Notes under the pieces: generated by a model
The model's database searches: none
Told to the model about the DNA's origin: nothing
What the model saw: the letters and a program-made list of their open reading frames with translations, nothing else
Position numbers and translations under genes: made by a program
Shown here: one piece after another, positions 6,880 through 53,389 of the stretch
How the letters are laid out: each line of letters opens with the position of its first letter
Position numbering within the stretch: position 1 is the first letter of the stretch
Assembly (NCBI RefSeq): GCF_030028105.1
Contig: NC_092374.1
Span: 176,972,057 to 177,036,056, forward strand
Length of the DNA: 64,000 nt
Origin: Mobula birostris
Taxonomy: Eukaryota
Direction: 5' to 3'

Positions 6880-7200
6880 TGTTCCAGTATGTTTGCCTCT
6901 GATTTAGAAGCAACCCTATAGTGGGAGTTGGTGCTCCTGTTTGCCTGCTGCCCTTGACCTCCTTTGTGTTGGGGTTTGGGTCATTCTGTTGGATTGGCTT
7001 CGGTGAGTATTTGCTTCAGATTTTGTTAACAGCCAGAGCAGTGAAGCAAGTTTTCGTAATGTTGGTTGCTCGTGTTTGGGGAGCTAATAAAGAGGGGTGG
7101 AAGTGCTGCCTGATCCAATAGGATGTCTGTTTGGATGTGTATTAATCCATTCAAGTGGCGAGTATGTCATCAAACTCCTGAGTTGTGCCTTATAAATTGT
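6880..7200 (-). mobile_element. Ancient LINE (CR1/L2-group) 3' fragment upstream of the alpha1 exon; orthologous copy at 45810-46010
   Basis: Shared ATTAAT...CAAGTGG.GAGT...GAGTTGTGCCTTATAAA block upstream of the alpha1 acceptor in both genes. Reverse complement encodes a YKAQ...EYSPLA-like RT tail. Confidence 0.6.
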
Positions 7201-7252: not shown

Positions 7253-7501
7253 GCTCACACAGCTTGATGTATTACTACTTCCAATCCATCAGCATTCCTG
7301 AAATGCCAGCTTTCTTCAGGATTGGGATGCTCGATGACTTGCAGATAAACTACTACGACAGCACACTCCATGAAGTAGGAGTCAAGTACCAGTGGATCAC
7401 AGATGGCTTACCGATCGACTACTGGAAAAAACAGAAAGAAATAACCGATCAGCTTCATGAGCTCCTCTCGATATATCTGAACCCACTCTCCTCATTGATT
7501 A
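7253..7501 (+). CDS. Gene A exon: MHC class I alpha1 domain
   Basis: Polypyrimidine tract + AG at 7251-7252; donor A|GTGAGT at 7502. Encodes GSHSLMYYYFQSISIPEMPAFFRIGMLDDLQINYYDSTLHEVGVKYQWITDGLPIDYWKKQKEITDQLHELLSIYLNPLSSLI (inside ORF 7123..7515). Confidence 0.9.
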
Positions 7502-10500
7502 GTGAGTGTCTTTGATCTGCACTACCCTTTGAGTATCACAGTAACTTGCATATTGCCAATACCTTGATCTTCTATTAGATCCGATTCTGCTGTATCAAGT
7601 TTAAAGCCCTTCACTCTTTCAAATCTCTCAAATCTCCATTCTGCTCTCTACCTTCCTTAACTCCAATTACAAGAATTCCACCCTAATCAACTGGGTAAGT
7701 TCTGACCCTTCAAAATAAACTGATTATCCAGTCCTCATTCCCCACGGACCTCTTCAGAGAACTAGTGAAAATCAAACCCACTGTCCATCCAGGCTATGTC
7801 TGGCTCAAACCCTAATCCTAAGCCTACTCCCCAACTCCAGACTTGGGGATGCTTCAGTCTAGGATGGTTGGAACTAAGGCATCCATGGTTCTTATCTAGT
7901 CACCTGCCACAATGATGCTTTCCAGATCTAATTCGGTGCAGGGACTCCGTGCATTAGAACATAGAACACTACAACACAGGAACAGGCTCTTTGGCCCACA
8001 ATGTTCTGTTGAACTAATTATGTTAATAATCAAATGCCAAACTAATCTCATCCTTTCTGCCTATACAATGTCCATGTCCTGCTCCCCTAAGCTTCTTGAA
8101 CACCCTCTTTGTAGCTGCTACTACCACAACCCCTGGAAGCACAATTTAGGAACCCGCCATTCTGCAAAAGACTTACCCTGCACATCTCCATTGAACATAT
8201 CCCCTTTTCCATGCCCTCTTGTATTAGACATTTCAACAGAGGGAAAAATGATGCCAGCTGTCAACTTTAAAACAGAGAAAACAGCCCAAGTTGGTCAAAT
8301 CTCTTGTTATTGCACATGCTGTCCAATCCAGGCAGCATCTGGTAAGCATCTTCTGCACCTTCTCCAAAGCCTCACCGTCACAGAGTGACCAGAACTGCTG
8401 TGTTGCACACTCTGTGCTTATTGACACTGAATACAAACACGTTGCTTTCACAATTCTCCGCCGTAACTCTCTGCAGTGGACGTGGTTCAGCGCAGACTGT
8501 ACAGCGCAGTCTCTCACTGTGAGCCCCTGCTCCGACCCACATGTTGACAGAGTACTTCAATGTGCCCCCTGCTTTGTATGTAGAGTACTGTGCACTGCAC
8601 AGTGTTTCAACGTGATCTCTGTACTGTGCACTCCGCATAAGTTCAAGCTCAAGTTCATTTCTGAACATAGGCTGATATACACAGGGTACAAATGCCATAA
8701 AATTACTGTCTTACAGCAGCAGCATGGTATATTACAGGACATGTTAGCATGGAGTCAATTTTAAATAAATATGTACAACCTGCACATGTACAAAGTAGTA
8801 GTAGTCGTAGCAGTAGTAGTAGTAGTAGTCGTAGTTCTAGTAGTAGTAATCATACTTTATTGATCCCGGGGGAAATTGGTTAATTGGAAATTGGAAAAAG
8901 GTATACAACAAAATAAATGTAACAATATCTGTGCAAGATTAAGAGCGAAGAATATAATCTAGGGTCTCGTTAAGGCTTTTCTGGTTGGTTAAAGAACCTG
9001 GTGGTATTGGGCATGGAGCTCTTGTTGGAGCCTGGGGTGTTGGTCCTTAGGCCTCTGTCCCTCCTTCCTAGTGGTAGCATCAAGAAGAGAGTATGTCCTG
9101 GATGATAGGGAGGGTGTGGCTCCTGATGATGGATGTTGTCTTTTTGGGAAATTGCCTTCCGCAGATGTCCTCAAAGATGGGGAGAGCTGTACCTGTGATG
9201 GGCCTGGTTGAGCCCAGCACCCCCGCAGCCTTTTGTCTTTCAGAGCTTTGGAGTTTACCTACCAGCTGTGATGTAACCAATCCGAATGCTTTTCACTGCA
9301 CGTTTGAAAATGTTGTCATTCTTTGATGACAAATTGAATCTCTTTAAACTTTCCCCTCCCACCTTGCTGTGTAGACAGTTGCTCACATTGATTACTGATT
9401 CCACCAGACCTTGTGATCTGTGCCACACACTGACAAATGTTCTATATAGTACACTTCACCCCAAGCTCTTGGCCTTAACTGTACACAGTCGCTCGCCGTG
9501 ACCCACCACTTTGTGCACCTCTTAGTCACGTAGCATTTACGTATTTACCAGACCATTATCTAGTATTGGAAGCTTCAGCCATTAATGTTAATTAATCTGT
9601 TGGTAATTTACAGGCATCAGCTACATACAGGCATGCTGGGGCTGCACACAATCTGGAGATACGGTCAACGCGATTCTAAAAATCAACTTCCCGGATATCG
9701 GAGAGTTGAGCTGTGATTTGAACACATTGAAATGCACTGGCACTGGTTTCCTAGCAATGTTAAATAATCACTTGAGCCAACTCAGTTTCACTGACATGAC
9801 TGCATTGAAGAGTAACTGCACTTGGTATTTGCAAAGGGCTGTTCAGCTTGGAAAAGAAGCATTGGAAAGGCAAGGCAAGTGGAACATCCTGCGATGGTGA
9901 AGGAACTCCCAATTCAGCAACATAAAGGATACCCCAGTCTGAGACGATTATGGGGCTCTGAGACCGAGATGGTGTGGGCTGTCATGATTCAGGATACTGA
10001 AGGATTTGATGATCTAACAAATTTATGGTGTTCCCAATCTGGGACAGAGAAGGATCTCCAGATCTGGATAGTAAGGAAGCTTCCAATCAGAGATGCAGAG
10101 GGATCTCCTCATACGGGAAAGAGAGAGAGCTCCCAAAACAAAATGGTTAGGGGTTTCCCAATCTGCAGTAATGAGGGATCTCCTAATTTGAAACAATGAG
10201 TTGGTTGGAGTGTACGGCCTACAGGCCTGGAGGTGGACTGTGAGCCCATGATTGGCTCCATTGCTTCTCTCTGACTGAGGCGTTGAGCAAGGTTGAAGTG
10301 GACGAGGCCAAGTGCGGAAGCCAGGCTGGTGTTTGGCACCATCTGCCGCGTTTGCCTGGTATTGCTCTCCCTTTTACTAGCTGCTGTTGGAGGAAAGTGC
10401 AGGAGGCTTGGGTTCCACATTGCAGGGATTGATCGGTGAGGCTCGTGGTTGTGACTCTTTTTGGGGGACTTTAGGGTTCATGTATTTCTGGATTCTGGTT

Positions 10501-13500
10501 ACCCTTTGTTTGCTGTTTCTAAGTGGTTTGATCAGCGTGCATCAGTGCGCACTGGGCACTTCAGCAAAGACTGATTCTGCAGCCTGCATTTGGCTAGTGG
10601 CAAGGCACTGAACTAAACTGAGTACATCTAGACTTGATAAAACCATAAGATATAGAAGCAGAATGGGGCCATTTGGCCCATTGAGTCTGCTCCGCCATTT
10701 CATCATGCTGGTCCATTATCCCTCACAGCTCCAATGTCCTGCCTTCTCCCTGTATCCCTTCATGTCGTGACTATACAGAATCTATCAATCTCTGCTTTAA
10801 ATATACTAAAGATGTGGCCTCCACAGCTACCAAGTTGCCTGTAACAACAAATTCCACAGATGTACTGCTCTCTGGCTAAAGAAATACTTCCTGATCTCCA
10901 TCTTAAGAGGATGCTCCTCTACCCGGAGTGTCACAGAAATTTACTATTGCTGATTAAACAAGGACACAGACCCCAGTATTCAGTTTAATTACTTACTTAC
11001 ATGACCATGGAGAGCCCACTAAAAGGCTCTGCTAAAGTGAGCACAAGCATGGTCTTTTACACCTTAAAATACATGCAATTCAGCAGTTCTCAGGAGTCAG
11101 GAGTTCCTGCATAGACCTTATTGACAAGATTCAGGATGCTTCCATACCTTACACAAACTTAGATACTCTACACTCAGCCCCCTTCTTCCAGATCGTTAAC
11201 ATATATCGTAAACAGTTGCAGGCCCAGCACAGACTCCAGTGGCACATCACTCACCACTGACTGCCAACCAGGGAAACACCCAGGCATCCCAACTCTCTTC
11301 TTTCTATTAGTCAACCAATCCTCTATCCCTATTGTTCTATTTTGGTAAATTATCACCAAAGCCTCTGCTATAACTTCTGCCATTTCTTTCAGTACCCTGG
11401 GACTTATCTATCTTCCGGCCCACACGTTTGCTCAGCACTACCTCTTTAGTGATAGCTATTGTATCAGGTTCTTGCCTCCCATTGCATCCATAACATCTGT
11501 CTTTGGCATGTTAGACGTGTCCTCCACCTCCACTGTGAAGACCGACACAACGTAGATCTAAAGCCTCTGCCATTTCCTCATTCCCCAATATTAATTCCCC
11601 TTCTCGTCTTCCAAGGGACTGATGTTCACTTAAGCCACCCTTTTCTGCTTTATATAATTATAACTTTCACAATCTGTTTTTATATTTTGTACTAGTTTAT
11701 TTTCATAGTCTATCTTCCCTTCCTCCAATGCTCGTTCAGTGGTTCTATGTTGCTTTTTAATGTTTTCTCAATCTTGCATTTTCCCACTTCTCTTGGCAAA
11801 TTTGTACAAACGAGCTTTTAGTTTGATGCTTTCTTTCATTTCCCACCCTTGCTTACTTACTTGCTCCCCACTTTTAACTGGAACATACTTCTGTTGAACA
11901 CCGTGAAAAATCTCTTTTAAAGTCTTCCACTGTTCCTCAACCGTCCCGCCATGTGGTCTGTGTTCCCAGTCTACACAAGCCAAGTCCTCCCTCATCCCAT
12001 TGTAGTCTCCACTGTTTAGGCATACAGTAATACACTAGTTTTCTATCGAACTATTGCACCCTCCATTTGTACGAGAAACTCAATCACACTGTGATCACTC
12101 TTTCCAAGAGGATCCCTAACTACAAGATCACTTATTTTACCTGATCATTGCACAGGACCGGATCTAAGATTTGTAGGTTTAGTGACATGCTGTTCAAGAA
12201 AGCCATCATGGATGCATTCTATGAAATCCTCCTTAAGACTGCCTTCATCAACTTGATTCACCCAATCTATACCCAAGTTAAAGTCCCCCACGATAACCTC
12301 TGTTCCATTCTTACATGCCACAGATATTTGTCTGTTGATTGCCTGTGCCACCATAATGTTATAATTCAGTGGTCGATAGACAACTTCTACCAGTGATTTT
12401 TTCCCTTTTCTATTCCTGATCTCTACCCAGATGGATTCAAAATTCTGCTCATTAGATCTTATATCGTCTTTCACGATCACCCTGATCTCATCCTTAATTA
12501 AGACCGCTAACCCACCTCCCTTACATTCTTGTCTATCCTTCCATATTACTTGATATTCTTGGATATTCACTTCCCAATCCTCTCCACCCTGCAACCACAA
12601 TTCTGTAATGCCCTTGAAATCATACATCTTTGTAGTGATTTGTGCCAAAAGTTCACTGACCTTATTTTGAATACTACGGGCATTCAGATAAAGTGCCATT
12701 TCACTCATTGTGCTTTTAAAATCTTGTAATCTTTTTCTCTTTTGCACTTGTCTTTTCTTTACTCCACCCTTACTTTTCTCTTTTTTATCTTTTGATTTTT
12801 CATTATCTTTTTCCACAGTTTTCTCTTTTACTTTATCTATACATTTCTAATCTGTTGAACGCATTTCCCCTACTAAACCCATCCCCTACAATTTAGTTTA
12901 AAGCCCTATGCACAGACCTGGTTATGCGATTCACGAGCATCCAGGTCCCATCACAGTTCAGCTGGAGCCTGTCCCATTGGTACAGCTCCCTCCTTCCCCA
13001 ACATTGGTGCCAATTTCCTATGAAATCAAGCCTACTCCTCCCACACCAATCCTTCAGCCATGCATATAACTCTCTAATCTTCTAAACCCCATGCCAGTTT
13101 GCTCATGGCTCAGTAGTAATCCAGAGATTACCACCTTTTCTGTTCTGCTTTTTAATTTGGTCCCTAGTTGCTCAAATTCACTCAGTAGAACCTCTCTCCT
13201 TGTTCTACCTATGTCACAACTTGTCAAAGGCCTTCTGAAAGTCCAAGTACACAACATCCACTGATTCTCCTTTGTCTATCCAGCTTGTTATTTTTTCAAA
13301 GAATTCCAACATGCCGACTACGTCCTATTTTATCATGTGCCTCCAAGTACCCCAAAATCCCATGTTGAACAATCAACTCCAAACAACTGAGGTCAGACGA
13401 AATGGCCTATGATTTCCTTGCTTCTGTGTCTCTCCCTGCTTGAAGACTGGAGAGATATTTGCAATTTTCCAATATTCCAGAACCATTCCAGAATCTAAAG

Positions 13501-16500: not shown

Positions 16501-19253
16501 GTAACGATAAGGTAACATCAGCCTGTGTTGAGGTGGTGACATAATTTTTCATTCTTCCCCAGTTACTCCAGAGGTTCAGGTGTTGACAAGGAGGCCAACA
16601 GCTACTGAAGGCGAGAGTCTCTCGTGCATCATCAGTCCCTTCTACCCTCGTGCTATCAACGCCACTTGGCTGAAGAATGGGCAGGTTGTCTCTGAGGGCT
16701 ACAAGGTGACGGTGCTACCAAACTACAATGATACATACTGGATGGAACTAGTCATTGAGCTGCAGGGCAACGACCCAAACATCTGTACTTGTCATGTCGA
16801 ATACAGCAGCCTGCCAAAGGCCCTGATGGTGAAGGGAGGTAGGTCATCGTACTGTACAGAATTTGCTTCATTCTGCCTGTGGTGGCTCATGGACTCATGC
16901 AGCAGAGAAGGAGGCTCTTCAGCCTGTCTGATTCATGCAAACCCTCTAGTTCTGAAAAACACTTGGCCCGTCCCCTTCGTTAACTTGATGATTCAACTGC
17001 TCATCTAGGAACGTCTTGAAAATTATGACGGTTTCTGCCTCCACTATCTCCTCAGGCAGTCTATTCCCAACTCCAACACCCCCTTGATGAAAGTATGCTT
17101 CTGTAGATTCCCTATAAACCTCTTAGTCATTATCTTAAACCTACCTCGAGTTATAGGCACCTTTATCATGGGGAAGGGTTTACTACTGTTCAGGCAAACA
17201 CATGAAGTGAAAGCATAAACTGCAGCAAGTAAAACCTGTAGCACTCTTCAGAATCAGAATCAGGTTTATTGTTGCTGGCATCTGTTGTGAAATTTGTTAA
17301 CTTAGCAGCAGCAGAACAATGCAATGCATGATAATATAGAAAAAATATAAAACAAGTAAGTAAATCAACTACAGTAATTATATATATGTATATTGAACAG
17401 ATTTTTAAGTAGTGCAAAAACAGAAATAATATATATTTTAAAAAAATCTTCCAACATTTTCTTTGTATTTCCTATCTACACCCCTAATAATTCTGTATAA
17501 CTCCATCAGGTCCACCCTCAGTCTCCTCCCATCTAAAGAAAACAAAACCAGCGTATCCATTCTCTCTTCCCATTTCATCTGAGCCACATTCCGGCGAATC
17601 TCCTCTGCACTCTGTCCAATGCAATCACATCTCTCCTCTGCTCTGGTGACCAGAACTGTAAACAATACTCAGAACGTAGCCTCACTGATGTTTTATAAAG
17701 CTGTACCATAATTTCCATGCCCTTGTATTCTATGCACTGATAATTGGCATCTCATACACTTCCTTCACCACCCTATTTACCTCTTTGAAAGACCTAATCA
17801 AGAATCTCCACCATAAAGCTGCACCATAAGTTCCCTTCTCTTGAATTCTGTGCCTTGATCAATGAAATCCAGCATCCTGTAGGCTATCTTCACCACCTTG
17901 TGCTCTACTTTGAACGACTTGCTCAAGTAGCCCCACTCCTTTTCACACACCTCTGAAAATTTCTTAATTCCAAGAACATATCCCATTTCCATTTTGGAAG
18001 TTATTATTTACCGTGCTCTTTTATCACTCGAATTAAATCTGTTCCTTCTGCTCACCAGATGTTACAGAAGCAGTTGAGCTGTTGGTCAAAGAAATATAGT
18101 AAGAACTCAACAGAAAGAACAACTAAGAAGCAATTGGGACTGTGGGGAAGACCTGACTGTCAAGTGGTCACTGTCTGGCTGTTGGGTGTTTGATTGTCAT
18201 AGATTCGTAGAATAATGCAGCAGAGAAATAGACCCTTCAGCCCAACACGCCTTTGTCAATCAAGATTTGCATTCAAAGAAGTCCCATTTATCCTGGCCCA
18301 TATATCCCTAAACCCTTTAGACTCATGTACTGGTGGATGTATCTTTTAAAAGATGGTAACTTGTCTGCCTCAACCACTTCATCTGGCACCCATAAATTGA
18401 CCACCATGTTGCCATTCAGGTTCCTGTTACATTTTTTCTCTCTTAACTTAAACCTATACCATCAGGGGCCTAGAAAAATTATTGTGCACTCTCTCTATGC
18501 CCCTCAAAATTTTATATACCTCTCTCTATAACTCAGCTCCCTACACTCCAGCGAAAATAATCCCAGCCTAAATTGTCTCTCCTTATTTCTCAAGTATTCC
18601 ATTCCTGGCACCATCCTTGTGAATCTCCTCTGCATCCTTTCCATCCTAATGACATCCTTCCTTCCTCAAAACACTTTCCATTCTCTTATCCTCCAAAATA
18701 TAAGATACTACCCACCCAGGACTACCCTCCCCCGCACCACCCCCCCCCCCCCGCCCCCACCCCTCCGCTTCTCCCAGCTCCCCAGCTCCCATCAGGCACA
18801 GATACAAAAGCCTGAAAGCGTGTACTACTATGATCAATGAACTCTTCTGTCTTTCTCCTGTGAGAAAATTGAGTGGTCCCCAAACATAGTAAGATAGGCA
18901 TCTGACCTCACAATCTAACTTTTAATGGTCTTGCACCTTATTGCCAGCTAGCACCACACATCCTCTGTAAAATTAATACATTACTCTGCATTCTGTTATT
19001 GTTTTCCCTTGTACAACCTTAATATCCTGATTTAGTGATTTGTATGGACAGAATGCAAAACATGTATTTCCACTGTACCTGGTAACTGGTGACAATAATA
19101 AAATAATTTATACATTTACCGATCTTTACTTGGTGGACAGGAGTTGGTGAGCCCCATGGTGCAGGTCCTATGTTGGGGCTGATGACTGTGTTTGCGATAA
19201 TCTCTGGAGTGATGTAGAGGTGCAGCAAGGAGAGAACCAAGGCATCACTGGAG
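7253..19253 (+). CDS. Non-classical MHC class I-like heavy chain gene A (spliced alpha1-alpha2-alpha3-hydrophobic C-terminus; leader exon not found)
   Basis: Four open exons (249, 261, 276, 113 nt), all joined in phase 1, with AG acceptors and GT/GC donors. The translation has class I hallmarks: GSHSL.Y start, W51/W60 equivalents, Q96, GC101...C164, GKEALER end of alpha2, and an Ig C1 set domain (C..FYP..I...W...C.V). A full paralog lies on the minus strand. Confidence 0.9.
7950..8390 (-). mobile_element. CR1 LINE 3' fragment
   Basis: GAACATAGAAC tail; ORF 8233..8517 contains ALEKVQKMLTRC..LD. Confidence 0.7.
8794..8848. repeat. (GTA)n microsatellite, imperfect
   Basis: Direct reading; abuts the 3' tail of a minus-strand LINE. 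Confidence 0.9.
8850..9330 (-). mobile_element. Rex1/Babar-like LINE 3' fragment
   Basis: Tail CTTTATTGATCCCGGGGGAAATT; degenerate LLPLGRRDRGLRT..PRLQ motif. Confidence 0.65.
9614..9874 (+). CDS. Gene A exon: MHC class I alpha2 domain (GC donor)
   Basis: Acceptor ttacAG at 9612-9613. Encodes GISYIQACWGCTQSGDTVNAILKINFPDIGELSCDLNTLKCTGTGFLAMLNNHLSQLSFTDMTALKSNCTWYLQRAVQLGKEALERQ. Ends CAAG|GCAAGT at 9875. Confidence 0.88.
10201..16160. mobile_element. Nested insertion stack in the gene A alpha2-alpha3 intron: non-autonomous retroelement (10201-10635 + 15945-16160) split by several minus-strand CR1 pieces (10640-15940)
   Basis: CR1 ORFs 11174..11383, 11768..11995, 12145..12816 (LYLNARSIQNK), 13054..13257, 14706..14930 and 15274..15501 (LLGDS...HLGTNE esterase). 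The host element ends in a CTTTGAATCTTTGA tail at 16146-16160. Confidence 0.75.
16563..16838 (+). CDS. Gene A exon: alpha3 Ig C1-set domain
   Basis: Acceptor ttccccAG at 16561-16562. Encodes VTPEVQVLTRRPTATEGESLSCIISPFYPRAINATWLKNGQVVSEGYKVTVLPNYNDTYWMELVIELQGNDPNICTCHVEYSSLPKALMVKG. Donor G|GTAGGT at 16839. Confidence 0.92.
17245..18000 (-). mobile_element. LINE 3' tail (17245-17435) plus old CR1 fragment (17440-18000) shared with gene B intron (38250-39100)
   Basis: GAATCAGAATCAGGTTTATT tail. The stretch GAATACAAG...GGAAATTATGGTACAGCTTTA occurs in the same relative orientation in both paralogs. Confidence 0.6.
19141..19253 (+). CDS. Gene A terminal coding exon: linker + hydrophobic C-terminus, stop TAG at 19215-19217
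   Basis: Acceptor AG at 19139-19140. Encodes GVGEPHGAGPMLGLMTVFAIISGVM*. Donor GAG|GTGGGT at 19254. Same 113-nt size and same stop position as the gene B exon. Confidence 0.8.
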
Positions 19254-19343
19254 GTGGGTAAACATACAGATGCCTTTGTTAAACCTGCTTGCTGTGACAG
19301 TATTAGACTGTACATTCAATCTCCTCTCTTTTCTCCTTTGCAG

Positions 19344-20520
19344 ATCAGCATTTGGCTCTAACTCAAGCACAGTTCTGAACACAGGGTGCAGCTTCAAACA
19401 GGTTTTTTTGATGAGTGACCACACACCTCAGCAAGCTTAGTCAGGATCAGAATCAGATTTAATATCACTGGCATAGATTGGGAGATTTGTTAATTTTACG
19501 GCAGCAGTACAATGAAATTTACAATAAATTAAAAACTGGGTTATATAAAGTATATATATATGGCTGTTAATTTAAAATAAGTAGTGCAAAATAACAAATA
19601 AAAAAAGTAGGAAGTGGTGTTCATGGGTTCAATGTCCATTGATAAATCGGCTGGCAGAGGGGAAGAAGCTGTGCCTTCAGGCTTCTGTACCTCCTCCCTG
19701 ATGGCTCCAGTGTGAAGGGGGCATGTCCTGGGTGGTGGTGGATGTAGCCTTCCTAAGGCATCGCTCCTTGAAGATATTTTGGATAGTATGGAGGCTGGTA
19801 CCCCTGATAGATCTGACTAATTTTACAAGTTTCTGCAATTTATTTCAATCTTGTCCAGTTGTCCCTCAAAACAGATGGTGATGAAAGCAGTCAGAATGCT
19901 CTCCATCGTACATTTGTTAAAGTTTTCGAGTGTTTTAGTTGACCTACAAAATCACCTCAACCTCCCAATGAAATACAGCCGCTGTCTTGGCTTCTTTATA
20001 GCTGCATCCTCAGAGATGTTGACACCCAGGAACTTGAAATTGCTCATTCTCTCCACTTCTGAACCCTCTATGAAGATAGGTTTAGTGTTGCATCCACTGT
20101 GGGAACTTGCTGGCTGAATCTTCTGCTGCTTTGACCAACTCCCGTTTAGCTATGTTTTAAATTTTTTCTTTCATCTGAGAAAGATTTCAAGTTTCAGTCT
20201 TGCAGTGCACTGACATTTGACACTCATTTGTAAGGTCCCTCTCCAGTCCTAATTCCACCACAAATGCCATATGTCAAATCATTGCCCTGAAGTATGAATG
20301 CCTGTTTTGAACACTGGACAGCCAAGAGTAATTCTTTTCTTCATTGGAGATTGGCAGGGTCCAACATTTAGTTTATAATATGAGCAGAAACTCTGGGATA
20401 CTGTGGCAATTTGGTGAATGAGAGAGTACAAAATTTGAGGATTATACAATGGAATGAATATGGTTACTTTCCCTGTTGTATGGTTGGGCAAACTCATATT
20501 GTTTTCTCTGGATTAAAGGT
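19344..20520 (+). other. Gene A downstream (3' UTR) exon, interrupted by a LINE at 19442-20081; 3' end not determined
   Basis: Strong acceptor ctcttttctcctttgcAG at 19342-19343 after a 90-nt intron. The sequence aligns by eye with gene B 36967-36370 on both sides of the LINE insertion. Confidence 0.55.
19442..20081 (-). mobile_element. 5'-truncated Rex1/Babar-like LINE in the gene A 3' UTR, with 5-bp TSD TTAGT
   Basis: TTAGT at 19437-19441 and 20082-20086. The paralog shows the empty site GCAAGCTTAGTGTTG. Confidence 0.85.
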
Positions 20521-21179
20521 TGAGGGCAGACCTGATAGAGATTTATATAATCCTGAGAGACAAAAAGAGATGGGATAGTCAGTTTCTTCCACAGACTAGA
20601 AATGTCAGATATTAAATTCACCAATCACACAGTAAAAAAAAAACTTACTTCTGACATCCCTCTATAGTTTCTTCTAATCATCGTCAAATTATTCCCCCTC
20701 ATATTGGCCATTTCCACCATGGGAAAACTCTGGCTATCCACTCAATCTATTTTTCTTATGCTTCTTACAGTCTTTATATCTCTGTCAAGTCACCTCTCAT
20801 CCTCCTTTGCTCCAAAGAGAAAAGCCCTAGCTCACTGAACATATCTTCATAAGACATACTCACTAATCCAGGCAGCATCCTGGTTATTCTCCACTGCACC
20901 CTATCTAAAGCTTCTACATCCTTCCTATAATGAAGTGGCCGAAAATGAACACAATAATGAGATTATAATCCATGATCAGCACAGCCCCTCCAAAGATGCA
21001 GACATGTGATCCCGCAGCGTTTTCCCAAGACTGAGTCTCTAAACATGCACCCTCCAGGGGCACAATGCTCCCAAGCATTGCACCTTCGACACTATAGCAG
21101 CCCCTCAGCAATGGTCCTTCTTCAGATAATCCACTTCTTAAAGTGAATCAGAACCTTAGTTACAACAGTGGAGAGTGGC

Positions 21180-35530: not shown

Positions 35531-35984
35531 TTTCAAATTGGTTTGGCACAATATTGTGAGTCAAATAGCCTGTTCCTGTGTTGTACATTTCAATATTCCA
35601 TCTCCCTCCAGATATAATATGCTCCAACTACGACCACCCTCTGCCTTCTTTGGGCAAGCCAATTCCGAATCCATGCAGACAGGTTTCTATGGATCCCATG
35701 CCTCATCATGTCTGAATGTCTACCAAGATATTTCTGGATGAGAAGACCATGACCCGTCACAGGAAGAATGTGCAAACTCCACACGGACCATGCTGGAGAT
35801 CAGGATTGAACCCGTGTCGCTGGAGTAGAGAGGCTTTGCTCTACTTGCTGTGCGATAGTGCCTTCAGATAACAAGCTGAGAGTCCTCCTCGACCCAACCC
35901 ATGATATCCACAAGGCAATAACAAAGGCTGACACTTCTGTCATAATAGCAAATAGTACACATGATCCAGGGAAATAACCGCATT

Positions 35985-36369: not shown

Positions 36370-36967
36370 TCTGTCCAATCCATTAGCAGGGATTGTGGGC
36401 ATATTTACACCACTCTATGAACCTCAGATTAATTTTTAACTCTACATCAACCCAAATTACACCAATATCCAGGGGTTTCTGTTCCTATTTTAAAGAAAAT
36501 GTTGGACCCTCCCAATCTCATATTAAGGGAAGAATTCTTAGGTATCCGGAGTTCACAACAGGAATTCACTCTTCCATTCAGGTCTTTCCAAATGCCCAGT
36601 AAATCTTTCACTGCTTTATCCCACCAACTTGCCTTGGCAGTAATTCCTCACACCAATGGTCTGATATACAGTATTGAATTGGCGTTAGGGTTGGGAAGAG
36701 CTATTCAGGTCAAGTAGGGCTTTACGAATGAGAAGTTGAAACTTCAACACACCACAACACTGAAACCTGATCGCTGAGTGAGATGTAAGAAAAAGTTATA
36801 ACATTGCAAAACAGACGAGCTGTAAAGTGGCAGAAGATTCAGCTAAGCATTTCCCGCACTGGAGCCAACACTAAGCTTGCTTAGGTGTTGAACCATTAAT
36901 CACAAAACCAGGCAGAGGATCCAGCTTGTGTTCAGAGCTGAGCTTGAGATTTGGGCCAAACACCCAC
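36370..36967 (-). other. Gene B downstream (3' UTR) exon; 3' end not determined
   Basis: Acceptor tttttcttttgcAG (36969-36968) after an 85-nt intron. Homologous to gene A 19344-19441 plus 20087-20520. Confidence 0.55.
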
Positions 36968-37052: not shown

Positions 37053-37165
37053 CTGCACTAAAGTCTTGACTCTCTCCTTGCTGCTCCTCTACACTACTTT
37101 AATCATCATCGTAAGTGTCGCCATCAGCCCCAGCAAAGGACCTGCACCACGAGGCTCCCCGGCTC
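37053..37165 (-). CDS. Gene B terminal coding exon: linker + hydrophobic C-terminus, stop TAG at 37091-37089
   Basis: Acceptor AG (37167-37166). Encodes GAGEPRGAGPLLGLMATLTMMIKVV*. Donor CAG|GTGGGT (37052). Confidence 0.8.
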
Positions 37166-40100: not shown

Positions 40101-43100
40101 GCAAATTCTATACCGTACGATGACCTACCTCCCTGCACCATCAGTGCCCCCGGCAGGCTGCTGTGCTTGACATGACAGGTATAGATGTTCATATCATTAT
40201 CCTGCAGCTCAATGACTAGTTCCATCCAGTATGTAGCATTGTAGTTTGGTAGCACGGTCACCTCGTAGCCCTTGGAGACAACCAGTCCATTCTTCAGCCA
40301 AGTGGCGTTGATAGCACGGGGGTAGAAGGGAGTGATGATGCATGACAGACTCTCGCCCTCAGTAGCTGTTGGCCTCTTTTTCAACACCTGAACCTCTGGA
40401 GCAACTAGGGAAGAATGAAGAATTAACGTCACTAAGTCAACACAAACTTATATTATCTTACCATTACAAATGGAAGTTACAGTGTCCAAGAGTGGGATTC
40501 TTACTCTTTACTGCCTCAAACCAGGACCTACCTCACCATTAATCACTATCTTGCCCGAATTCATCTCCTCAGCTCAAGGCCATGCAGACTATAGCCAGCA
40601 GTAATTTTCATTCATCTGACAGGCCTAGATCAAGGTTATAGCCACCATTACCAATCTTTATGTCACCCATAGTCCCAAGTCAATATTACCTCATATTCCA
40701 AGATTGATCATGCCATCATCATCCCAAATTAAGTTTAGTTTACCAGCCTTAATTGGGAGATCCTTCAAAATTCCTGATCAAGAGATGCCCTCAATGTCCT
40801 GGATTGGGAGATCTGTTACTGTGTCTAAATAGAAGTTCCAACACAATCCCTGACTTGGACATCATTAGTCACCTTCAACTGAGGTATCCTTCACCCCAGA
40901 TAAGGACATCGCTCACCATTCAGAATTGGGAGATCCCCCAGTGTCGCAGATTGGGACCTCTCTCATCTTCTTAGACCAGAACACTGCTCACCAAATGACA
41001 CTTTGATGGTGAGTCCCCTCATTCTCCTGAATCAAAAGCTCCCTCACAAACTCAGAATCAGGCTGCCCCCGTCCATTTGTGTCAAGACACCCCTGAATAT
41101 CTCGGATCAGGAGTCCATCAATTGTCTGAAGCAGGAGTTCCCTCACAGAGCTTACAGTATGTAATCAGATGTTCTACTTGCCTTGCCTTTCAAGCTCCTC
41201 TCTGCCAAGCTGAAGACCTTTCTGCAAATACTGAATGCAGGTACTGTTCATCACATAAATTTCAGGAATATCAGCAATATTAACTTGCTGAAGATAATCA
41301 TTGACCAACATCAGGACACCAGTGGTAATACACTTCCCGGTAGTAAAGTCACAAATGAGCTCTCCCAAATCTTGGCAGCCAATCTTGAGGAAGGTTTTGA
41401 ATGTATTTGCAGACTGCGTACAGCCCAGAAGCCCCTGGATGTATCTGATGCCTGGAAGGCACCAACAGGTTAATCTGTGTTAGTGGCTGAATATTCGAAA
41501 TCTTCAACCATTCCCACCTGCATAATGTCCTGCTAAACATGTAAATACCATGTGCACTGTCTTGTGCAACACTTTCTCAGTAGGGTGAAGTATATGACAT
41601 GTCCCCTTTGACCCTCAGTCATGTTTATTGATGTACAATATAGGCATCACAGCTTGGTATGGCATCAGGCCTGCTCATGATCACAAGAAGAAGAAGAAGA
41701 AGAAGAAGAAGAAGAAGAAGAAGAAGAAAGCCCTTAACTCCGAGTGGAATCATTGGGACACCGTCATGATGGAGTTTTTTTAGCCTGCTTTCTTATTTTT
41801 AAAGAGGCCGAGTTGCTAGCTCGACGCTCAACGCAGCACGAATGGAAAGCGTGCAAGGGAGCCGACTGGATTCGGTCTCGGGAGCCTTTGCTCAGAAGTT
41901 CAGCGCTGATGCCACTAGGCCACCGGCTGGCTCATGATCACAAGAAACTGCAAAAAGTTATGGATACAGATCAGCACACACAGCCCCCCCCACCCCGTAC
42001 ATTCTATCTACATTTCTCGCTGCTTCAGTAAATCAGACAACAAAATCAAAGACCCCATCCACGCACAAGTTTTAAATTGGGGTAGGGAAAATTATAAGGG
42101 CAATAGGCAGGTTCTAAGAAGTGTTAATTGAGAACACTTTTTCTCTGGCAAATCTACAATAGACATGCGGAGTGTGTCTAAATATCAATTTCTAGAGTAC
42201 AGGAGAAGTATGTTCTTGGTTAGAAAGAAGGACGGGGATGAAAAGAAAAGGGAACCTTGGATGTCCAGAATGGTAATGAGCTTAGACAAGAAGAAAAAAG
42301 AGAAGTTATATAAAGCTTTGGAAGTCAAATCAAACAAAGCATATGAGGAGTATAAACAAGCCAGAAAAGAATGAAAGAAGGTAATTAGGAAAGCCAGGAG
42401 GGGCCATGAAAAATCCTTGACAAGTAGCATTAAGGTGAATCCCACGGCATTCTACACATACGTCACAGGATAAAAGGATGGGAAATACTTACTTGGATGC
42501 TAAGAATGTGAATGAGGTACTTAATGAGTACAGTGCCTCAGTATTTACCGGAGAAAAGGATATGGAGGACTAGGAGATCAGTACTGAGTGTAAAATACAT
42601 TAGGGCATTTAGAGGTTAAGGAGAAAACAGTGTTGGCCGTCCTAAATAGGAGTTCCCACACTATGTGTGACTTGGACATCATTAGGAGTATTAAAGTGGA
42701 TAAGGCCCCAGGGTTTGATGGGATTTACCCCAGATTCTTGTAGGAGGCAAGAGGTGAGATTTCTAGGCCCTTGACCAGTACCTTTGTGTCCTATCTAGCC
42801 ACAGGCAAGGTTGTAGAGGACTGGTGAGTGGTTAATGTTGTACTGCTGTTTAAGATGGGAACAAGGGAAAATCCTGGGAACTACAGACTGGTGAGTCTCA
42901 CATCAGTTGTCGGGAAATTACTGAAGAGAATTCTTAGGGACGGGATATATGAGCATTTGAAAATCCATGGCCTAATGAGAGAGCCAGCATGGCTTTGTGT
43001 GTGGCAAGGTGTGTCTTACCAACCTAACTGAGTTTTCTTGGATAAGCTGAGAGAGAGATTGATGAAGGTAGGGCAGTGGAGGATTTCAGTAAGGCATTTA

Positions 43101-45764
43101 AAAAAGTCCCTCATGGGAGGCTAATCCAGAAGATTAAGATCTATGGTTTCCATGGCAAATTGGCTGTTTGGATTCAGAACTGGCTTGCACAGAGAAGACA
43201 GAGGGTGGTGGTTTAAGGGAACTATTTGAGCTTGAGGTCTGTGATTAGTAGAGTTGCACAGGGATTTGTGCTAGGACCTCTGCTGCTTGTGACGTATATA
43301 AATGACCAGGCTGAAAATGTAGATGGATGGGTTGGTAAATTTGCAGTTGATACCAAGATTGGTGGAATTGTGGATAGTGTAGATGACTGGCAAAGGTTAC
43401 AGCATTATATAGATCAGTTGCAGAAAAAATAGCAGTTGGAGTTTAACCCAGATAAATGTGAGGTGTTGGACATTGTAGGGTAAATGCAAGGATACAGTAC
43501 TGTTAAGGGCAATGTCCTTAACAGTGTTGCTGAGCAGAGAGCTGTTGGGACCAAGTTCATAGCTCCTTGAAAGTGGCTACGTAGGTCAATAAAGTGGTTA
43601 AAATGGAATGCTTGCTTTTACTAATTGAAGCACTGAGTTCAAAAGTCAGGAGGTTATGTTACAATTTAATAAAATTCTGGTTCGGTCACATCTGGGGTAT
43701 TGTCTATGGATCTGGCCAACCCACTAGAGGAAGGATGTTGAGGCTTTGGAGAGGATGATGAAGAGGTTCACCAGGATGCTGCCTGGTTTAGAGGGCACGT
43801 GCTATCACACGAGGCTGGATAAACATGGGTTTCCCTGGAGCATCAGAGGCCAATGGGTGATCTGATAGAGGTTAAAGAGGGGTGTGATTAGAGAGCATCT
43901 GTTTCCCAGGGTTGAAATGTCTAACACCAGAGGACATGCATAGAAGGTGAGAGGTGTTAAGTTCAAGAGGGATCTGAGGGGCAATTCTTTTCTTTACTCA
44001 GAGTCATGGATGCCTAGTATAGTGGTAGAGGCAAATACATTAAAGGATTTCAAGAGACATTTCGATAGGCACATTGATATAAGGAGGATGGATGTATATG
44101 GATGTGGTGTAGGTAGGACGGATTAGCGTTTGGGTGTTTTTGATTAGCTTTTTAGCCGGTTCAGCACAACACTGTTGTGCTCTTCTGTGTTCGATGGCAT
44201 TCTCTCTTCTTCCCCATCCCATAGGGCAGAAGATACAAAAGCCTGAAAACATATATCACCGGGGTCAAGGGCAGCTTTTATCCTGCTGTTATCAGTCTAT
44301 GTATAGTCCCCTGGTACAATAATATGAAATCCTGACCTCACAAACACCCATATTATGGTTTTACACCTTATGGTCTGTTTTCATTGCACTTTCTCTATGA
44401 CTGTAACAATTCATTCTCCATTCTGTTATTGCTTTCTCTTGCACCTCAATGTACTGTGGTAATGAAATGACATGTACAGATGGTGTGCAAAATAAAGTTG
44501 TTGTTCACTGGACCTTAGCAGATACGACAATAACAAATCAATTTACCAATTTACCATGAAGCACACAAAGCAATGGCAAAGAGCATGGGATCACAGTGTT
44601 CTGCATGCAGTGTGTGGTACACATGACAGGATCAGTAATGAACGTGAGCATGAGAGTGTGGCACAGTGGAATATTGTTGGTGGAGGGGGTGATCTGTACA
44701 GAGTGTATATCATTGCATGATATAATGCAGGGGTCATGATGAAGGACTGTGTACTGCATATCAGTGTGTGGAGAAGGTAGCACACCAACATCTTTGCTTA
44801 GAAGTCTAAGGAGATTCAGCATGTCATTGAAAACTCTGACAAATTTATAGAAATCACGTCCTAGTATTGAAACTCTCTCCCATTGAGGACATTTACCAGT
44901 GAAGGTGACATTCTTCAGCAGGGACAACCACCATCAGGGCCGTGTCCTCTTCCCCATGCTGCCATCAAGCATGAGTTCCAGTAGCCAGAAAACCCACACC
45001 TCAAGGTTTAGCACCTTTCCCTCCACTGCCATCAGGTTCTTGAACCAAGCTGAAAAACCCCAACATTACCTCTAATGATTTTTCTCTCAATATGCACAAG
45101 TATCATTATGTTTTTGTACACATGCAAATTACATGTAATATATTTGAATTTTACTTTATATTAACTTATGTTTGCTTGACCTGTGCAAAGCCAGAGAGGC
45201 AGTGGGTCTGATTCTCACTATTTCTTGGAGGAGATCAGTGTAGAGTGAGCAGTGGGTTCTCAGAAATAGATTCTCAGTGTGTTTTGAAGGGCAAAATTTC
45301 TCTTGCAAATGTGGGATACAGATGGAATGCTTTTAATTGAAGGTAAATATTTGTTACAGGATGTTGAGAGGGCATATAACCCTTGAAAGATTTGAAACCA
45401 AGGATAGGAATTTTAAAACTGATACAACTTAATTGGGTCCATTGAAAGGTCAACATGTTTTCAGTGTGTAAGTCACTGTGAGCCTCGAAGAAGAGTGGAG
45501 ATCAAAGACACGTACCAAGCATCGAGGCGAATGGAGTCAGATTAGGAGGAAGTAACTTTTTAATTGCGTCCGGGATCTCTTTCTGGTTTTTCCAGTCGTT
45601 AGCTGAAAAGCCGTCCATGATCCACTGTTGCTTGGCTTCTACCCTCTGGATGGTGCTGTCATAGTAGCATATCTGCAGGTCATCCAACATCCCAACCATG
45701 GAGATGTATGGCAGCTCAGGAATGTTTATTGAATGGAGGTAGAAATATGTCAAGCTGTGGGAGA
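37053..45764 (-). CDS. Non-classical MHC class I-like heavy chain gene B (paralog of gene A; leader exon not found)
   Basis: Four open exons (249, 270, 276, 113 nt) in phase 1 on the minus strand, with the same domain order, splice phases, GC donor and stop position as gene A. Confidence 0.9.
38480..38700 (-). mobile_element. tRNA-derived SINE (HE1/V-SINE-like) in gene B intron
   Basis: GGGAGGAAACCGGAGCACCC...GAGAACGTACAAACTC, the reverse complement of a typical fish/shark SINE body. Confidence 0.65.
40129..40404 (-). CDS. Gene B exon: alpha3 Ig C1-set domain
   Basis: Acceptor ttccctAG (40406-40405). Encodes VAPEVQVLKKRPTATEGESLSCIITPFYPRAINATWLKNGLVVSKGYEVTVLPNYNATYWMELVIELQDNDMNIYTCHVKHSSLPGALMVQG. 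Donor G|GTAGGT (40128). Confidence 0.92.
41182..41451 (-). CDS. Gene B exon: MHC class I alpha2 domain (GC donor)
   Basis: Acceptor ccttccAG (41453-41452). Encodes GIRYIQGLLGCTQSANTFKTFLKIGCQDLGELICDFTTGKCITTGVLMLVNDYLQQVNIADIPEIYVMNSTCIQYLQKGLQLGREELERQ. Ends CAAG|GCAAGT (41181). Confidence 0.88.
41690..41929 (-). mobile_element. tRNA-derived SINE with (TTC)n tail and 17-bp TSD, inserted in a Rex-like fragment (41560-42050)
   Basis: A box TGGCCTAGTGG and B-box-like GACCGAATCC on the minus strand. (AAG)14 at 41685-41726. TSD GCTCATGATCACAAGAA at 41673-41689 and 41930-41946. Confidence 0.85.
42070..44150 (+). mobile_element. CR1 LINE ORF2 remnant to 3' end
   Basis: ORFs 42165..42374, 42828..43031 (GNYRLVSLTSVVGKLL) and 43226..43432 (QGFVLGP, KFAVDTK). 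Confidence 0.88.
44560..45070 (+). mobile_element. Rex1/Babar-like fragment(s)
   Basis: HHQGRVLFPMLPSS..SSQKTHTSRF...AIRFLN-like C-terminal motif at 44925-45050. Confidence 0.5.
45516..45764 (-). CDS. Gene B exon: MHC class I alpha1 domain
   Basis: Acceptor ttttttcAG (45766-45765). Encodes VSHSLTYFYLHSINIPELPYISMVGMLDDLQICYYDSTIQRVEAKQQWIMDGFSANDWKNQKEIPDAIKKLLPPNLTPFASML. Donor G|GTACGT (45515). Confidence 0.9.
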
Positions 45765-52925: not shown

Positions 52926-53389
52926 CGGCGGGGGTGTGGTTTCGTGAATATAATTCCTGACTCTTCACTCCACACCCCAACTCAGTAGGTGGCGGTAATG
53001 CACCCTATGTTGGCCTGCCTACTGCCGTTAAACTTCACAGAGGAAAAAGATCTTTTGGAACCCGCGACAGATCTCAAACGCTAGTTGAACATTTTCAGTG
53101 ATAATTTTATCCCGAACTTATAGGCTCCAAAAATTCCCCAGTATCTTGGATTTCCTCTGTAGGACACATGAATGCGATGCACCAGTCCTCCAGTCTAATG
53201 GGGGCACGCCTGGGATCTCTAGAAGATTAGGGGTGAGTTTCCAAAGTGCAACTCCAGACCTTTAAAACCATCACTCACCCTCGCCTTACCTGTCTGGCTT
53301 CCCGCAACAGAGCAGAGCGACAATATGGTGAAAAGGAGCAATCCCGGTCCGTTCCAACTCTCCATTGCGGTGTCTCCTGACCTCGACCA

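What the first reader, a model, noticed from the sequence alone, without database searches (positions are those of the whole stretch)
19141..19253. Conserved stop right after the hydrophobic segment in both paralogs: GPI-anchored (or secreted) class I molecule
Seen: gene A ends ...KG-GVGEPHGAGPMLGLMTVFAIISGVM* and gene B ends ...QG-GAGEPRGAGPLLGLMATLTMMIKVV*. The TAG is at the identical codon (19215-19217; 37091-37089), so it is not a sequencing error. Established: small omega-site residues ~25 aa from the end, a polar spacer and a C-terminal hydrophobic stretch without a charged tail form a GPI-attachment signal; GPI-linked class I-like proteins are known in mammals (mouse Qa-2, MILL, ULBP/RAE-1). 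The stop is 36 nt upstream of the next exon junction, within the ~50-nt window that normally escapes NMD. Inference: these may be GPI-anchored class I molecules in a cartilaginous fish. The Lys in the gene B tail could instead make it secreted.
Basis: partly seen in the sequence, partly recalled or inferred. Interest (0 to 1): 0.8.

Follow-up and report, generated by a model that had tools for sequence, protein, structure and literature searches.

The report
Tail-less, GPI-signal-like end of manta UFA
Two manta-ray copies of UFA, a shark-and-ray MHC class I-like family thought to bind lipids, really do stop right after a short, weakly hydrophobic segment, as every relative examined does, which fits a GPI lipid anchor that nobody has yet tested at the bench.

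Summary
Gene A (+) has TAG at 19215-19217 and gene B (-) has TAG at 37091-37089, at the same codon of a 113-nt exon and 36 nt before the next splice junction.

The window is Mobula birostris. RefSeq models XP_072113435.1 and XP_072113434.1 match the in-window exons and already end at these stops.

The stop is old. All 24 full-length relatives, from 7 batoid and 7 shark genera, end at the same alignment column. All six genomic copies I could read carry TAG, 36 or 41 nt before the junction. Spliced RNA contigs from Mobula and a skate carry the stop too.

The family is UFA. The nearest solved structure is 8GM8, "shark nonclassical MHC class I, UFA". A skate UGA-like relative keeps a full membrane span and a basic tail.

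The last 24 residues have the layout of a GPI signal: small residues G-G-V-G, a 7-residue spacer, then 10-15 uncharged residues that a crude scale scores as too weakly hydrophobic to span a membrane.

GPI anchoring is the best-supported reading (about 0.55). It is untested, and a tail-less membrane anchor remains possible.

This scan reached the same reading earlier on other UFA copies of this genome (s1-145154).

The parts
7253..7501 (+). Gene A (XP_072113435.1) alpha1 exon
   Evidence: Translation. The tblastn match to P0119 is 99%. Pfam MHC_I scores 27.5 bits on this exon alone, just under the 28.3-bit cutoff. The leader exon lies upstream of the window.
9614..9874 (+). Gene A alpha2 exon, followed by a GC-AG intron
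   Evidence: P0119 reads ...ERQ|VTPE across this junction. The RNA loose end at 16561 ends in ...GGAAAGGCA.
16563..16838 (+). Gene A alpha3 (C1-set Ig) exon
   Evidence: Pfam C1-set at E 4.9e-12. The RNA joint 16838>19141 is seen.
19141..19253 (+). Gene A exon 5: linker, hydrophobic C-terminus, stop, and 36 nt of 3'UTR that looks like a former basic tail
   Evidence: Both borders are confirmed by RNA joints.
19143..19214 (+). Candidate GPI signal, omega+1 to the C-terminus (V295-M318). The candidate omega residue G294 is the codon split across the exon 4/5 junction (16838 + 19141-19142).
   Evidence: Layout analysis. G294 is nearly invariant in the family alignment.
19215..19217 (+). TAG stop of gene A, followed by a purine (TAG A)
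   Evidence: The RNA contigs are unchanged at this position.
19344..19514 (+). Gene A exon 6 (3'UTR); its 3' end was not determined
   Evidence: RNA joint 19253>19344. The sequence from 19441 onward is a repeat insertion relative to gene B.
53290..53365 (-). Gene B (XP_072113434.1) leader exon, MESWNGPGLLLFTILSLCSVAGSQT
   Evidence: It matches the N-terminus of P0117.
45516..45764 (-). Gene B alpha1 exon
41182..41451 (-). Gene B alpha2 exon (3 codons longer than in gene A), GC donor
40129..40404 (-). Gene B alpha3 exon
37053..37165 (-). Gene B exon 5, with TAG at 37091-37089
   Evidence: The exact sequence is held by two RNA-type runs at a word share of 1.00.
36870..36967 (-). Gene B exon 6 (3'UTR), first part
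   Evidence: Alignment with gene A and Pristis. Coordinates.

Best explanation
Genes A and B are two manta-ray paralogues of UFA, the CD1-like nonclassical MHC class I lineage of sharks and rays. Their TAG is the true, ancestral end of the coding sequence.

The heavy chain enters the ER through an N-terminal signal peptide. It ends in a 24-residue C-terminal signal built as follows: small residues G293-G294-V295-G296 (omega most likely G294, the codon split across the exon 4/5 junction); a 7-residue polar, Pro/Gly-rich spacer (EPHGAGP); and a 15-residue, marginally hydrophobic tail with nothing after it.

The most likely fate is cleavage by the GPI transamidase and transfer to a GPI lipid. The mature beta2m-associated molecule would then sit in the outer leaflet with no cytoplasmic tail. 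It would therefore lack the tail-borne sorting motifs that mammalian CD1b, CD1c and CD1d use (own knowledge).

The stop lies 36 nt (41 nt in a skate and a sevengill shark) upstream of the last known splice junction, so the mRNA should escape nonsense-mediated decay. The purine-rich 36 nt after the stop is most simply the relic of a former basic cytoplasmic tail, now 3'UTR.

Shown: the stop, its age, the splicing, the family assignment, and the layout and weak hydrophobicity of the end. Inferred: GPI attachment, the omega site, the trafficking consequences, and the origin of the stop.
For: Identity. P0119 and P0117 (M. birostris RefSeq) match the in-window exons of genes A and B (98.8-100% over the exons found; gene A's alpha2 hit was not listed and was compared by eye) and end at the TAG.

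Family. phmmer of P0119 gives 8gm8_A at E 2.9e-62 and 9ch4 at 3.6e-27. Foldseek titles them 'shark nonclassical MHC class I, UFA' and 'UGA'. In the tree, UFA is monophyletic at 100/99 against a UGA-like and a classical outgroup.

Age of the stop. 24 of 24 full-length relatives, from Mobula, Hemitrygon, Hypanus, Pristis, Amblyraja, a Leucoraja-like skate, Cetorhinus, Carcharodon, Mustelus, Pristiophorus, Heterodontus, Chiloscyllium and Heptranchias, end at one column. TAG is present in all six genomic copies read, 36 or 41 nt before the donor.

Transcripts. The exon 4-5-6 splicing is seen and the TAG is unchanged in four Mobula RNA runs. Gene B's exon is held exactly in two runs. A fully spliced skate mRNA contig, L005, has a 316-aa ORF ending at TAG, 41 nt before the exon 5/6 join.

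Signal features. The uncharged C-terminal run is 10-15 residues in 22 of 24 sequences. The crude 19-residue insertion energy is +1.2 to +5.8 kcal/mol, against -0.4 to -4.4 for seven class I chains that have a membrane span and tail. Nothing follows the hydrophobic run, or only 2-4 residues that include K, R or E. G294 is nearly invariant, and the small-residue cluster sits a fixed 10 residues before the hydrophobic run in both rays and sharks.

Contrast. A Leucoraja UGA-like protein, P0032, keeps ...GIGCW followed by KKRKRKK and about 36 more residues.

Against readthrough. The base after the stop is a purine in all six copies, and the post-stop length differs by 5 nt between lineages, so no frame is conserved.
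Against: No trained GPI predictor and no bench test could be run. The omega rules and the insertion-energy scale were applied by hand, and the scale values were recalled from memory.

Skates have a 21-residue uncharged run with an energy near 0, which could span a membrane.

The hydrophobic segment is fairly well conserved in sequence (G-P-x-L-G-L ... G-x-x) between sharks and rays. That is more than a cleaved signal strictly needs and could point to a retained helix.

The candidate omega site lies only about 3 residues after the last strand of alpha3.

Expression of gene A itself is not shown: the RNA contigs carry F315, not S315, so they come from paralogues or orthologues.

The 3' end of the mRNA was not mapped, so a further downstream intron cannot be excluded.
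Confidence: 0.55

Rival explanations
1. Tail-less type I membrane anchor. The C-terminal hydrophobic segment is not cleaved and stays as a short membrane helix with no cytoplasmic residues, perhaps stabilised by a partner protein.
For: AlphaFold draws residues 302-317 as a helix, though at pLDDT 44-49. The sequence of the segment is conserved between sharks and rays. Skates have a 21-residue uncharged run with an energy near 0.
Against: In 22 of 24 sequences the uncharged run is only 10-15 residues, and the crude insertion energy is positive. There is no basic stop-transfer residue after it. K, R or E sit 2-4 residues from the end in five sequences: both gene B-type proteins, Carcharodon, Mustelus and Heterodontus. 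Class I chains with real membrane spans in the same data set have mostly 17-24 uncharged residues (shorter where a proline breaks the run), followed by W/Y and a basic cluster.
Confidence: 0.27
2. Secreted or rapidly degraded product. The weak hydrophobic end is neither a good membrane span nor a good GPI signal, so the protein is released, or is retained and degraded. This would apply most to the lysine-bearing gene B type.
For: Gene B's uncharged run is only 12 residues, followed by K-V-V, with an energy of +4.7. A Narcine isoform, P0132, ends in a hydrophilic peptide, so soluble forms may exist in the family.
Against: The hydrophobic end has been kept in every lineage since sharks and rays split, and the gene B-type end (MMIKVV) is identical in Mobula and Hemitrygon. 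A useless or harmful end would not be expected to persist like that. Charged residues near the extreme end are known in accepted GPI signals (own knowledge).
Confidence: 0.1
3. Programmed readthrough of the TAG, or an alternative isoform, produces a form with a membrane span and a short basic tail (RCSKERTKASLE... in gene A), alongside the short form.
For: The 36-41 nt after the stop stay open in frame in all six copies and encode R/K-rich peptides. The post-stop stretch is 78-81% identical between Mobula and Pristis, slightly above the flanking introns at 67-80%.
Against: The base after the stop is a purine everywhere, which is a strong termination context (own knowledge). The post-stop length is 36 nt in some lineages and 41 nt in others, and exon 6 differs by a 1-nt indel between genes A and B, so no reading frame is conserved. 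Twelve to fourteen open codons are expected by chance about half the time. Introns are almost as conserved as this stretch.
Confidence: 0.04
4. Pseudogenes or an assembly error: the stop is a disabling mutation.
For: The stop falls where other class I chains continue into a W/Y residue and a basic tail.
Against: The same stop is found in 24 relatives across elasmobranchs. The alpha1-alpha3 frames are intact. Spliced, abundant transcripts exist. The ectodomain of a shark orthologue has been crystallised (8GM8).
Confidence: 0.01

Closest known systems
UFA, the shark nonclassical MHC class I lineage (PDB 8GM8, nurse shark). PMC10751288 describes it as very similar to CD1 (unpublished data) and PMC12562908 as CD1-like and probably lipid-binding (personal communication).
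   Same: It is the best sequence match (E 2.9e-62; about 38% identity by Foldseek and 41% in the family alignment). Both window genes fall in one clade with it at 100/99 support. The alpha1-alpha2-alpha3 build is the same, and the shark orthologues have the same tail-less end.
   Different: The crystallised construct stops at the end of alpha3, so it says nothing about the anchor. UFA is called single- or low-copy, but it is multicopy in Mobula and stingrays: at least 5 RefSeq proteins in each of Mobula birostris and Hemitrygon. I could not read a primary UFA paper, so I do not know whether the anchor is discussed there.
Mouse Qa-2 (Q7/Q9) and human MICA*008: class I or class I-like chains made GPI-anchored by a premature stop in the transmembrane exon (own knowledge, not checked here)
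   Same: A stop within or just after the membrane-span exon removes the tail and leaves a short hydrophobic end that serves as a GPI signal. The downstream former-tail sequence persists as 3'UTR.
   Different: Those are recent events, specific to a mammalian lineage or allele, in peptide-presenting or NKG2D-ligand molecules. Here the stop is fixed in a whole lineage and predates the shark-ray split. GPI linkage is proven for the mammalian cases and not here.
Mammalian CD1 (lipid-presenting class I-like molecules)
   Same: It is the proposed functional analogue of UFA (PMC12562908). RefSeq even names one stingray copy 'CD1d-like'.
   Different: CD1 proteins are type I membrane proteins. CD1b, CD1c and CD1d carry tyrosine-based endosomal sorting motifs in their tails (own knowledge). 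UFA has no tail at all. Orthology between UFA and CD1 is unresolved (PMC10751288).
UGA, the second CD1-like elasmobranch lineage (PDB 9CH4)
   Same: It is an elasmobranch nonclassical class I lineage reported together with UFA (PMC12562908). A Leucoraja UGA-like protein, P0032, matches 9ch4 at E 2.9e-60.
   Different: UGA keeps a normal membrane span, a tryptophan at the membrane boundary, a KKRKRKK cluster and a long tail.

Membership tests
MHC class I-like heavy chain, elasmobranch UFA lineage | Alpha1/alpha2 MHC fold followed by a C1-set alpha3 domain | tested here: met
   The gene A alpha3 exon hits C1-set at E 4.9e-12. The alpha1 exon alone hits MHC_I at 27.5 bits, against a cutoff of 28.3. 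PF00129 and PF07654 are on record for the full proteins. The AlphaFold model (mean pLDDT 68.7) matches class I structures.
MHC class I-like heavy chain, elasmobranch UFA lineage | Closer to the UFA reference (8GM8) than to any other class I lineage | tested here: met
   8gm8_A scores E 2.9e-62. The next best is 9ch4 (UGA) at 3.6e-27, and classical chains score around 1e-20. The clade with nurse shark UFA has 100/99 support.
MHC class I-like heavy chain, elasmobranch UFA lineage | Location in the MHC class Ib cluster | not tested
   Only two class I genes and repeats are in the window, with no framework genes to anchor it. PMC10751288 places UFA in a class Ib cluster.
MHC class I-like heavy chain, elasmobranch UFA lineage | Lipid ligand in a hydrophobic groove | not testable with these tools
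   Reported only as a personal communication in PMC12562908.
GPI-anchored protein | N-terminal ER signal peptide | tested here: met
   Gene B's leader exon, 53365-53290, encodes a hydrophobic core ending ...SLCSVAGSQT. Gene A's leader is known only from the RefSeq model, because it lies outside the window. This was judged by eye; no SignalP run was made.
GPI-anchored protein | C-terminal hydrophobic stretch of about 10-20 residues reaching the end, with no cytoplasmic tail | tested here: met
   The run is 15 residues in gene A. In gene B it is 12 residues plus KVV. Across the family it is 10-15 residues in 22 of 24 sequences and 21 in two skates. At most 4 residues follow it.
GPI-anchored protein | Small residues at omega and omega+2, then a spacer of 5-10 residues before the hydrophobic stretch | tested here: met
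   Gene A reads G293-G294-V295-G296, then EPHGAGP, then the tail. Sharks keep the same register (K-G-V-S, then 7 residues). G294 is nearly invariant. This is a hand-applied rule, not a trained predictor.
GPI-anchored protein | Marginal hydrophobicity of the signal compared with true membrane spans | tested here: met
   The family scores +1.2 to +5.8 kcal/mol (skates about 0), against -0.4 to -4.4 for seven chains with a span and tail. The scale is crude, ignores position, and was recalled from memory.
GPI-anchored protein | Positive score from a trained predictor (NetGPI, PredGPI) | not tested
   No such predictor is available in this tool set.
GPI-anchored protein | Release by PI-PLC and dependence on the GPI synthesis pathway | not testable with these tools
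   This is a bench experiment.
Conventional type I class I heavy chain (membrane span plus cytoplasmic tail) | Hydrophobic span of about 20 or more residues, followed by a basic stop-transfer cluster and a tail | tested here: not met
   The ORF ends at the last hydrophobic residue. No RNA contig gives another end.

The most novel reading that the evidence does not exclude
UFA, the CD1-like and probably lipid-binding class I lineage of sharks and rays, has been GPI-anchored since before the shark-ray split. That would make it the oldest GPI-linked MHC-like molecule known and the first outside mammals. It would also mean that this early form of lipid presentation works without any tail-directed endosomal sorting.
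Probability: 0.5. Interest if true: 0.65.

Novelty: new member of a known kind. Interest (0 to 1): 0.5.

Why it matters
How a class I-like molecule is tethered decides where it travels and what it can load. Mammalian CD1b, CD1c and CD1d use motifs in their cytoplasmic tails to reach endosomes and pick up lipids (own knowledge). A UFA with no tail, and probably a GPI anchor, would have to load at the surface, in the secretory pathway or through raft-type recycling. It could also be shed by phospholipases.

The feature is fixed in every shark and ray examined, so it is a property of the lineage, not a quirk of one gene. One simple experiment would test it: PI-PLC release of the expressed protein. 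It also matters for anyone making UFA tetramers or expression constructs.

The finding does not uncover a new kind of system. GPI-linked class I-like molecules are well known in mammals, the gene models are already in RefSeq, and the anchor remains a prediction.

Tried and rejected
- **Leader-like sequence next to alpha1.** I first took the ATG-containing stretch just upstream of the alpha1 exons (A about 7059-7120; B about 45964-45905) for the leader. It has no usable phase-1 donor in gene A. The RefSeq proteins show that the real leader is elsewhere: gene B's is at 53365-53290 and gene A's lies outside the window.
- **Readthrough or a hidden tail.** I tested whether the post-stop 36 nt is under coding constraint. 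It is only slightly more conserved than the introns, and its length and frame differ between lineages, so I rejected this.
- **Pseudogene or assembly error.** Rejected on the conservation of the stop and on the transcripts.
- **ESM Atlas feature search on the last 33 residues.** The best score was 0.80, below the tool's own threshold for a usable lead, so it was uninformative.
- **Literature.** Nine searches found no accessible paper that discusses the membrane anchor of any elasmobranch class I. The two J Immunol papers on UDA and UEA (PMC7002201, PMC8454915) are not held, and no primary UFA paper was found. The supplements of PMC10751288 label these loci only as 'MHC-Ib'.
- **Genomic DNA.** DNA for the Hemitrygon, Hypanus, Mobula hypostoma, Cetorhinus and Chiloscyllium genes could not be fetched because the files were too large.
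- **The idea that the TAG arose from the boundary tryptophan codon TGG.** It is attractive by comparison with UGA and other chains, but it remains speculation. One skate has TGG immediately before the TAG.
Full report
**1. What is in the sequence**

The window holds two class I-like genes in opposite orientation.

- Gene A (+ strand): alpha1 exon 7253-7501, alpha2 9614-9874, alpha3 16563-16838, a 113-nt exon 5 at 19141-19253, and exon 6 starting at 19344.
- Gene B (- strand): leader exon 53365-53290, alpha1 45764-45516, alpha2 41451-41182, alpha3 40404-40129, exon 5 at 37165-37053, and exon 6 starting at 36967.

Exon 5 of gene A reads (G)VGEPHGAGPMLGLMTVFAIISGVM and then TAG at 19215-19217. 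Exon 5 of gene B reads (G)AGEPRGAGPLLGLMATLTMMIKVV and then TAG at 37091-37089. In both genes the stop is codon 25 of the exon and lies 36 nt before the donor site. After the stop the exons would read RCSKERTKASLE and RSSKERVKTLVQ, which look like the start of a basic cytoplasmic tail.

**2. Transcripts**

Logan contigs from four RNA-type runs show the joints 16838>19141 and 19253>19344, both GT..AG. They show no alternative acceptor or terminal exon.

Laid on 19090-19530 with every difference listed, these contigs differ from the window within exon 5 only at two places:

- 19204 C>T, which changes S315 to F, in all four runs;
- 19209 G>A, which changes V317 to M, in two runs.

The TAG is unchanged. 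The F and M variants are those of the paralogues P0120, P0123 and P0124 and of the Mobula hypostoma protein P0121. The contigs also differ by about 9% in alpha3. They therefore come from close paralogues or orthologues, and expression of gene A itself is not shown.

Gene B's exon 5 is held word for word (8 of 8 sampled 31-mers) by two RNA-type runs of one organism.

A fully spliced skate mRNA contig, L005 from SRR13269337, has a 316-aa ORF that ends ...IIGTW then TAG. The exon 5/6 join lies 41 nt further on.

**3. Identity**

A HMMER search with gene A's alpha1 exon, followed by searches with full-length hits, recovered the following:

- P0119 (XP_072113435.1) and P0117 (XP_072113434.1) of Mobula birostris. 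They match the in-window exons of genes A and B (98.8-100% over the exons found) and already end at the TAG.
- At least three more Mobula birostris copies.
- Copies in Mobula hypostoma, Hemitrygon akajei (six or more proteins), Hypanus sabinus, Pristis pectinata (two), Amblyraja radiata, Leucoraja erinacea and Narcine.
- One copy each in Cetorhinus, Carcharodon, Mustelus, Pristiophorus, Heterodontus, Chiloscyllium, Scyliorhinus torazame and Heptranchias.

The nearest solved structure is 8gm8_A at E 2.9e-62. Foldseek gives its title as 'Crystal structure of shark nonclassical MHC CLASS I, UFA'. Next is 9ch4, 'UGA', at E 3.6e-27.

A maximum-likelihood tree puts all 25 sequences, including nurse shark UFA, in one clade at 100/99 support against a UGA-like and a classical outgroup. 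Within batoids the gene B type (Mobula B plus a Hemitrygon copy) splits off before Pristis plus the gene A type, at 87/88 support. The gene A type then expanded separately in Mobula and in stingrays.

PMC10751288 mentions UFA, from unpublished data, as a class Ib lineage very similar to CD1 that maps to an MHC class Ib cluster. PMC12562908 mentions it, from a personal communication, as CD1-like and probably lipid-binding.

**4. The stop is a property of the lineage**

In the alignment of 24 full-length proteins, every sequence ends at the same column.

I could read genomic DNA for six copies: genes A and B, two Pristis genes, Amblyraja and the sevengill shark Heptranchias. All six have TAG at the homologous codon, followed by a purine. 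All have a donor 36 nt (Mobula, Pristis) or 41 nt (Amblyraja, Heptranchias) downstream, then a short intron (about 80-120 nt) and exon 6.

The stop therefore predates the shark-ray split. By my own knowledge that split is of the order of 250-350 million years old; I did not compute a date. The stop has always sat closer than about 50 nt to the last known junction, the distance within which NMD is normally not triggered (established rule, own knowledge).

**5. Is the sequence after the stop still coding?**

Between Mobula and Pristis the 36 post-stop bases are 78-81% identical. The coding part of exon 5 is 70-78% identical and the flanking introns 67-80%. That is a small excess over only 36 positions.

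The post-stop length differs by 5 nt between lineages, and exon 6 differs by a 1-nt indel between genes A and B, so no frame is conserved. The purine after the TAG favours efficient termination (own knowledge).

I conclude that the post-stop sequence is 3'UTR. It is probably a slowly decaying relic of a tail, and it may have been kept purine-rich because it helps the splicing machinery recognise the exon. That last point is inference.

**6. Anchor**

The end of gene A lays out as follows:

- G293-G294-V295-G296, small residues; G294 is nearly invariant in the family and is the codon split across the exon 4/5 junction;
- EPHGAGP, a 7-residue spacer;
- MLGLMTVFAIISGVM, 15 uncharged residues running to the C-terminus.

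Sharks keep the same register, for example K-G-V-S, then 7 residues, then 13 hydrophobic residues in Cetorhinus.

Across the family the uncharged run is 10-15 residues in 22 of 24 sequences and 21 in two skates. The best 19-residue window sums to +1.2 to +5.8 kcal/mol (skates about 0) on a crude Hessa-type scale, whose values I recalled from memory. Seven class I chains with a real membrane span and tail, scored the same way, give -0.4 to -4.4. Those chains end their span with W or Y and a basic cluster. So does a Leucoraja UGA-like protein, the sister CD1-like lineage.

Five UFA sequences carry K, R or E two to four residues from the end: both gene B-type proteins, Carcharodon, Mustelus and Heterodontus. 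That is awkward for a membrane helix but harmless in a signal that is cleaved off.

An N-terminal signal peptide is present. This is the standard anatomy of a GPI-attachment signal. It parallels mouse Qa-2 and human MICA*008, where a premature stop in the membrane-span exon turns a class I-like chain into a GPI-linked one (own knowledge).

**7. What remains open**

- No trained GPI predictor and no experiment was available.
- The skates' longer run could span a membrane.
- The conserved G-P-x-L-G-L ... G motif could reflect a retained helix.
- The AlphaFold model draws a helix at 302-317, but at pLDDT below 50, so it decides nothing.

My estimates are: GPI anchoring about 0.55; a tail-less membrane anchor about 0.27; secretion or degradation, most plausible for the gene B type, about 0.10; readthrough or another isoform about 0.04; pseudogene about 0.01.

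**8. Novelty**

The genes, their RefSeq models and the UFA lineage are known. GPI-linked class I-like molecules are known in mammals. In the accessible literature I found no statement that UFA is tail-less with a GPI-type signal in all sharks and rays. I could not read a primary UFA paper.

This scan reached the same reading earlier on other UFA paralogues 1.57 Mb away in the same genome (s1-145154). My tests here were made independently of that note and agree with it.

Noticed in passing
window 9875 (gene A), 41181 (gene B, - strand); L001 about 10358: The intron after the alpha2 exon uses a GC donor (AAG|GCAAGT) in both manta genes and in Pristis. The RefSeq proteins read ...ERQ|V... across it, and an RNA contig end confirms that it is used.
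   Followed up: partly
window 7059-7120 (+) and 45964-45905 (-): A leader-like remnant with an ATG lies directly upstream of alpha1 and is homologous between genes A and B, but it is not the leader in use. Gene B's real leader exon is 7.5 kb upstream, at 53365-53290, and gene A's lies outside the window. It may be a decayed former leader exon.
   Followed up: partly
window 19441-20081: Gene A's 3'UTR carries an insertion of about 640 nt relative to gene B and Pristis. Parts of it and of the flanking sequence (19540-19706, 19874-20207, 20709-21042) have very high summed RNA contig depth, as expected for an expressed interspersed repeat.
   Followed up: no
window 12145-12816 (-), 34266-35343 (+), 320-1855 / 34006-35532: There are long ORFs resembling retrotransposon endonuclease or reverse transcriptase, and repeat copies about 73% identical are shared between the two halves of the window. 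These are ordinary LINE debris in the introns and the intergenic space.
   Followed up: no
window 9710-9736 (gene A alpha2); alignment A1 columns about 150-160: The C-x6-C pair in alpha2, noted separately as s1-146135, is present in most UFA sequences, sharks and the crystallised nurse shark protein included. It is lost in several stingray copies (P0126-P0129, P0131). 8GM8 could show whether the two cysteines are bonded.
   Followed up: no
P0145 (XP_072115050.1), elsewhere in the Mobula birostris genome: This RefSeq model of 581 aa fuses two further gene B-type copies head to tail and ends in the same ...MMIKVV. The gene B type is therefore also multicopy in the manta, and that model is probably a merge of two genes.
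   Followed up: no
P0132 (Narcine bancroftii isoform X2): This isoform ends in a hydrophilic peptide (...EIKQREDVKEAR) instead of the hydrophobic end. It may be a soluble splice form, or the electric ray lineage may differ. No DNA could be fetched.
   Followed up: no
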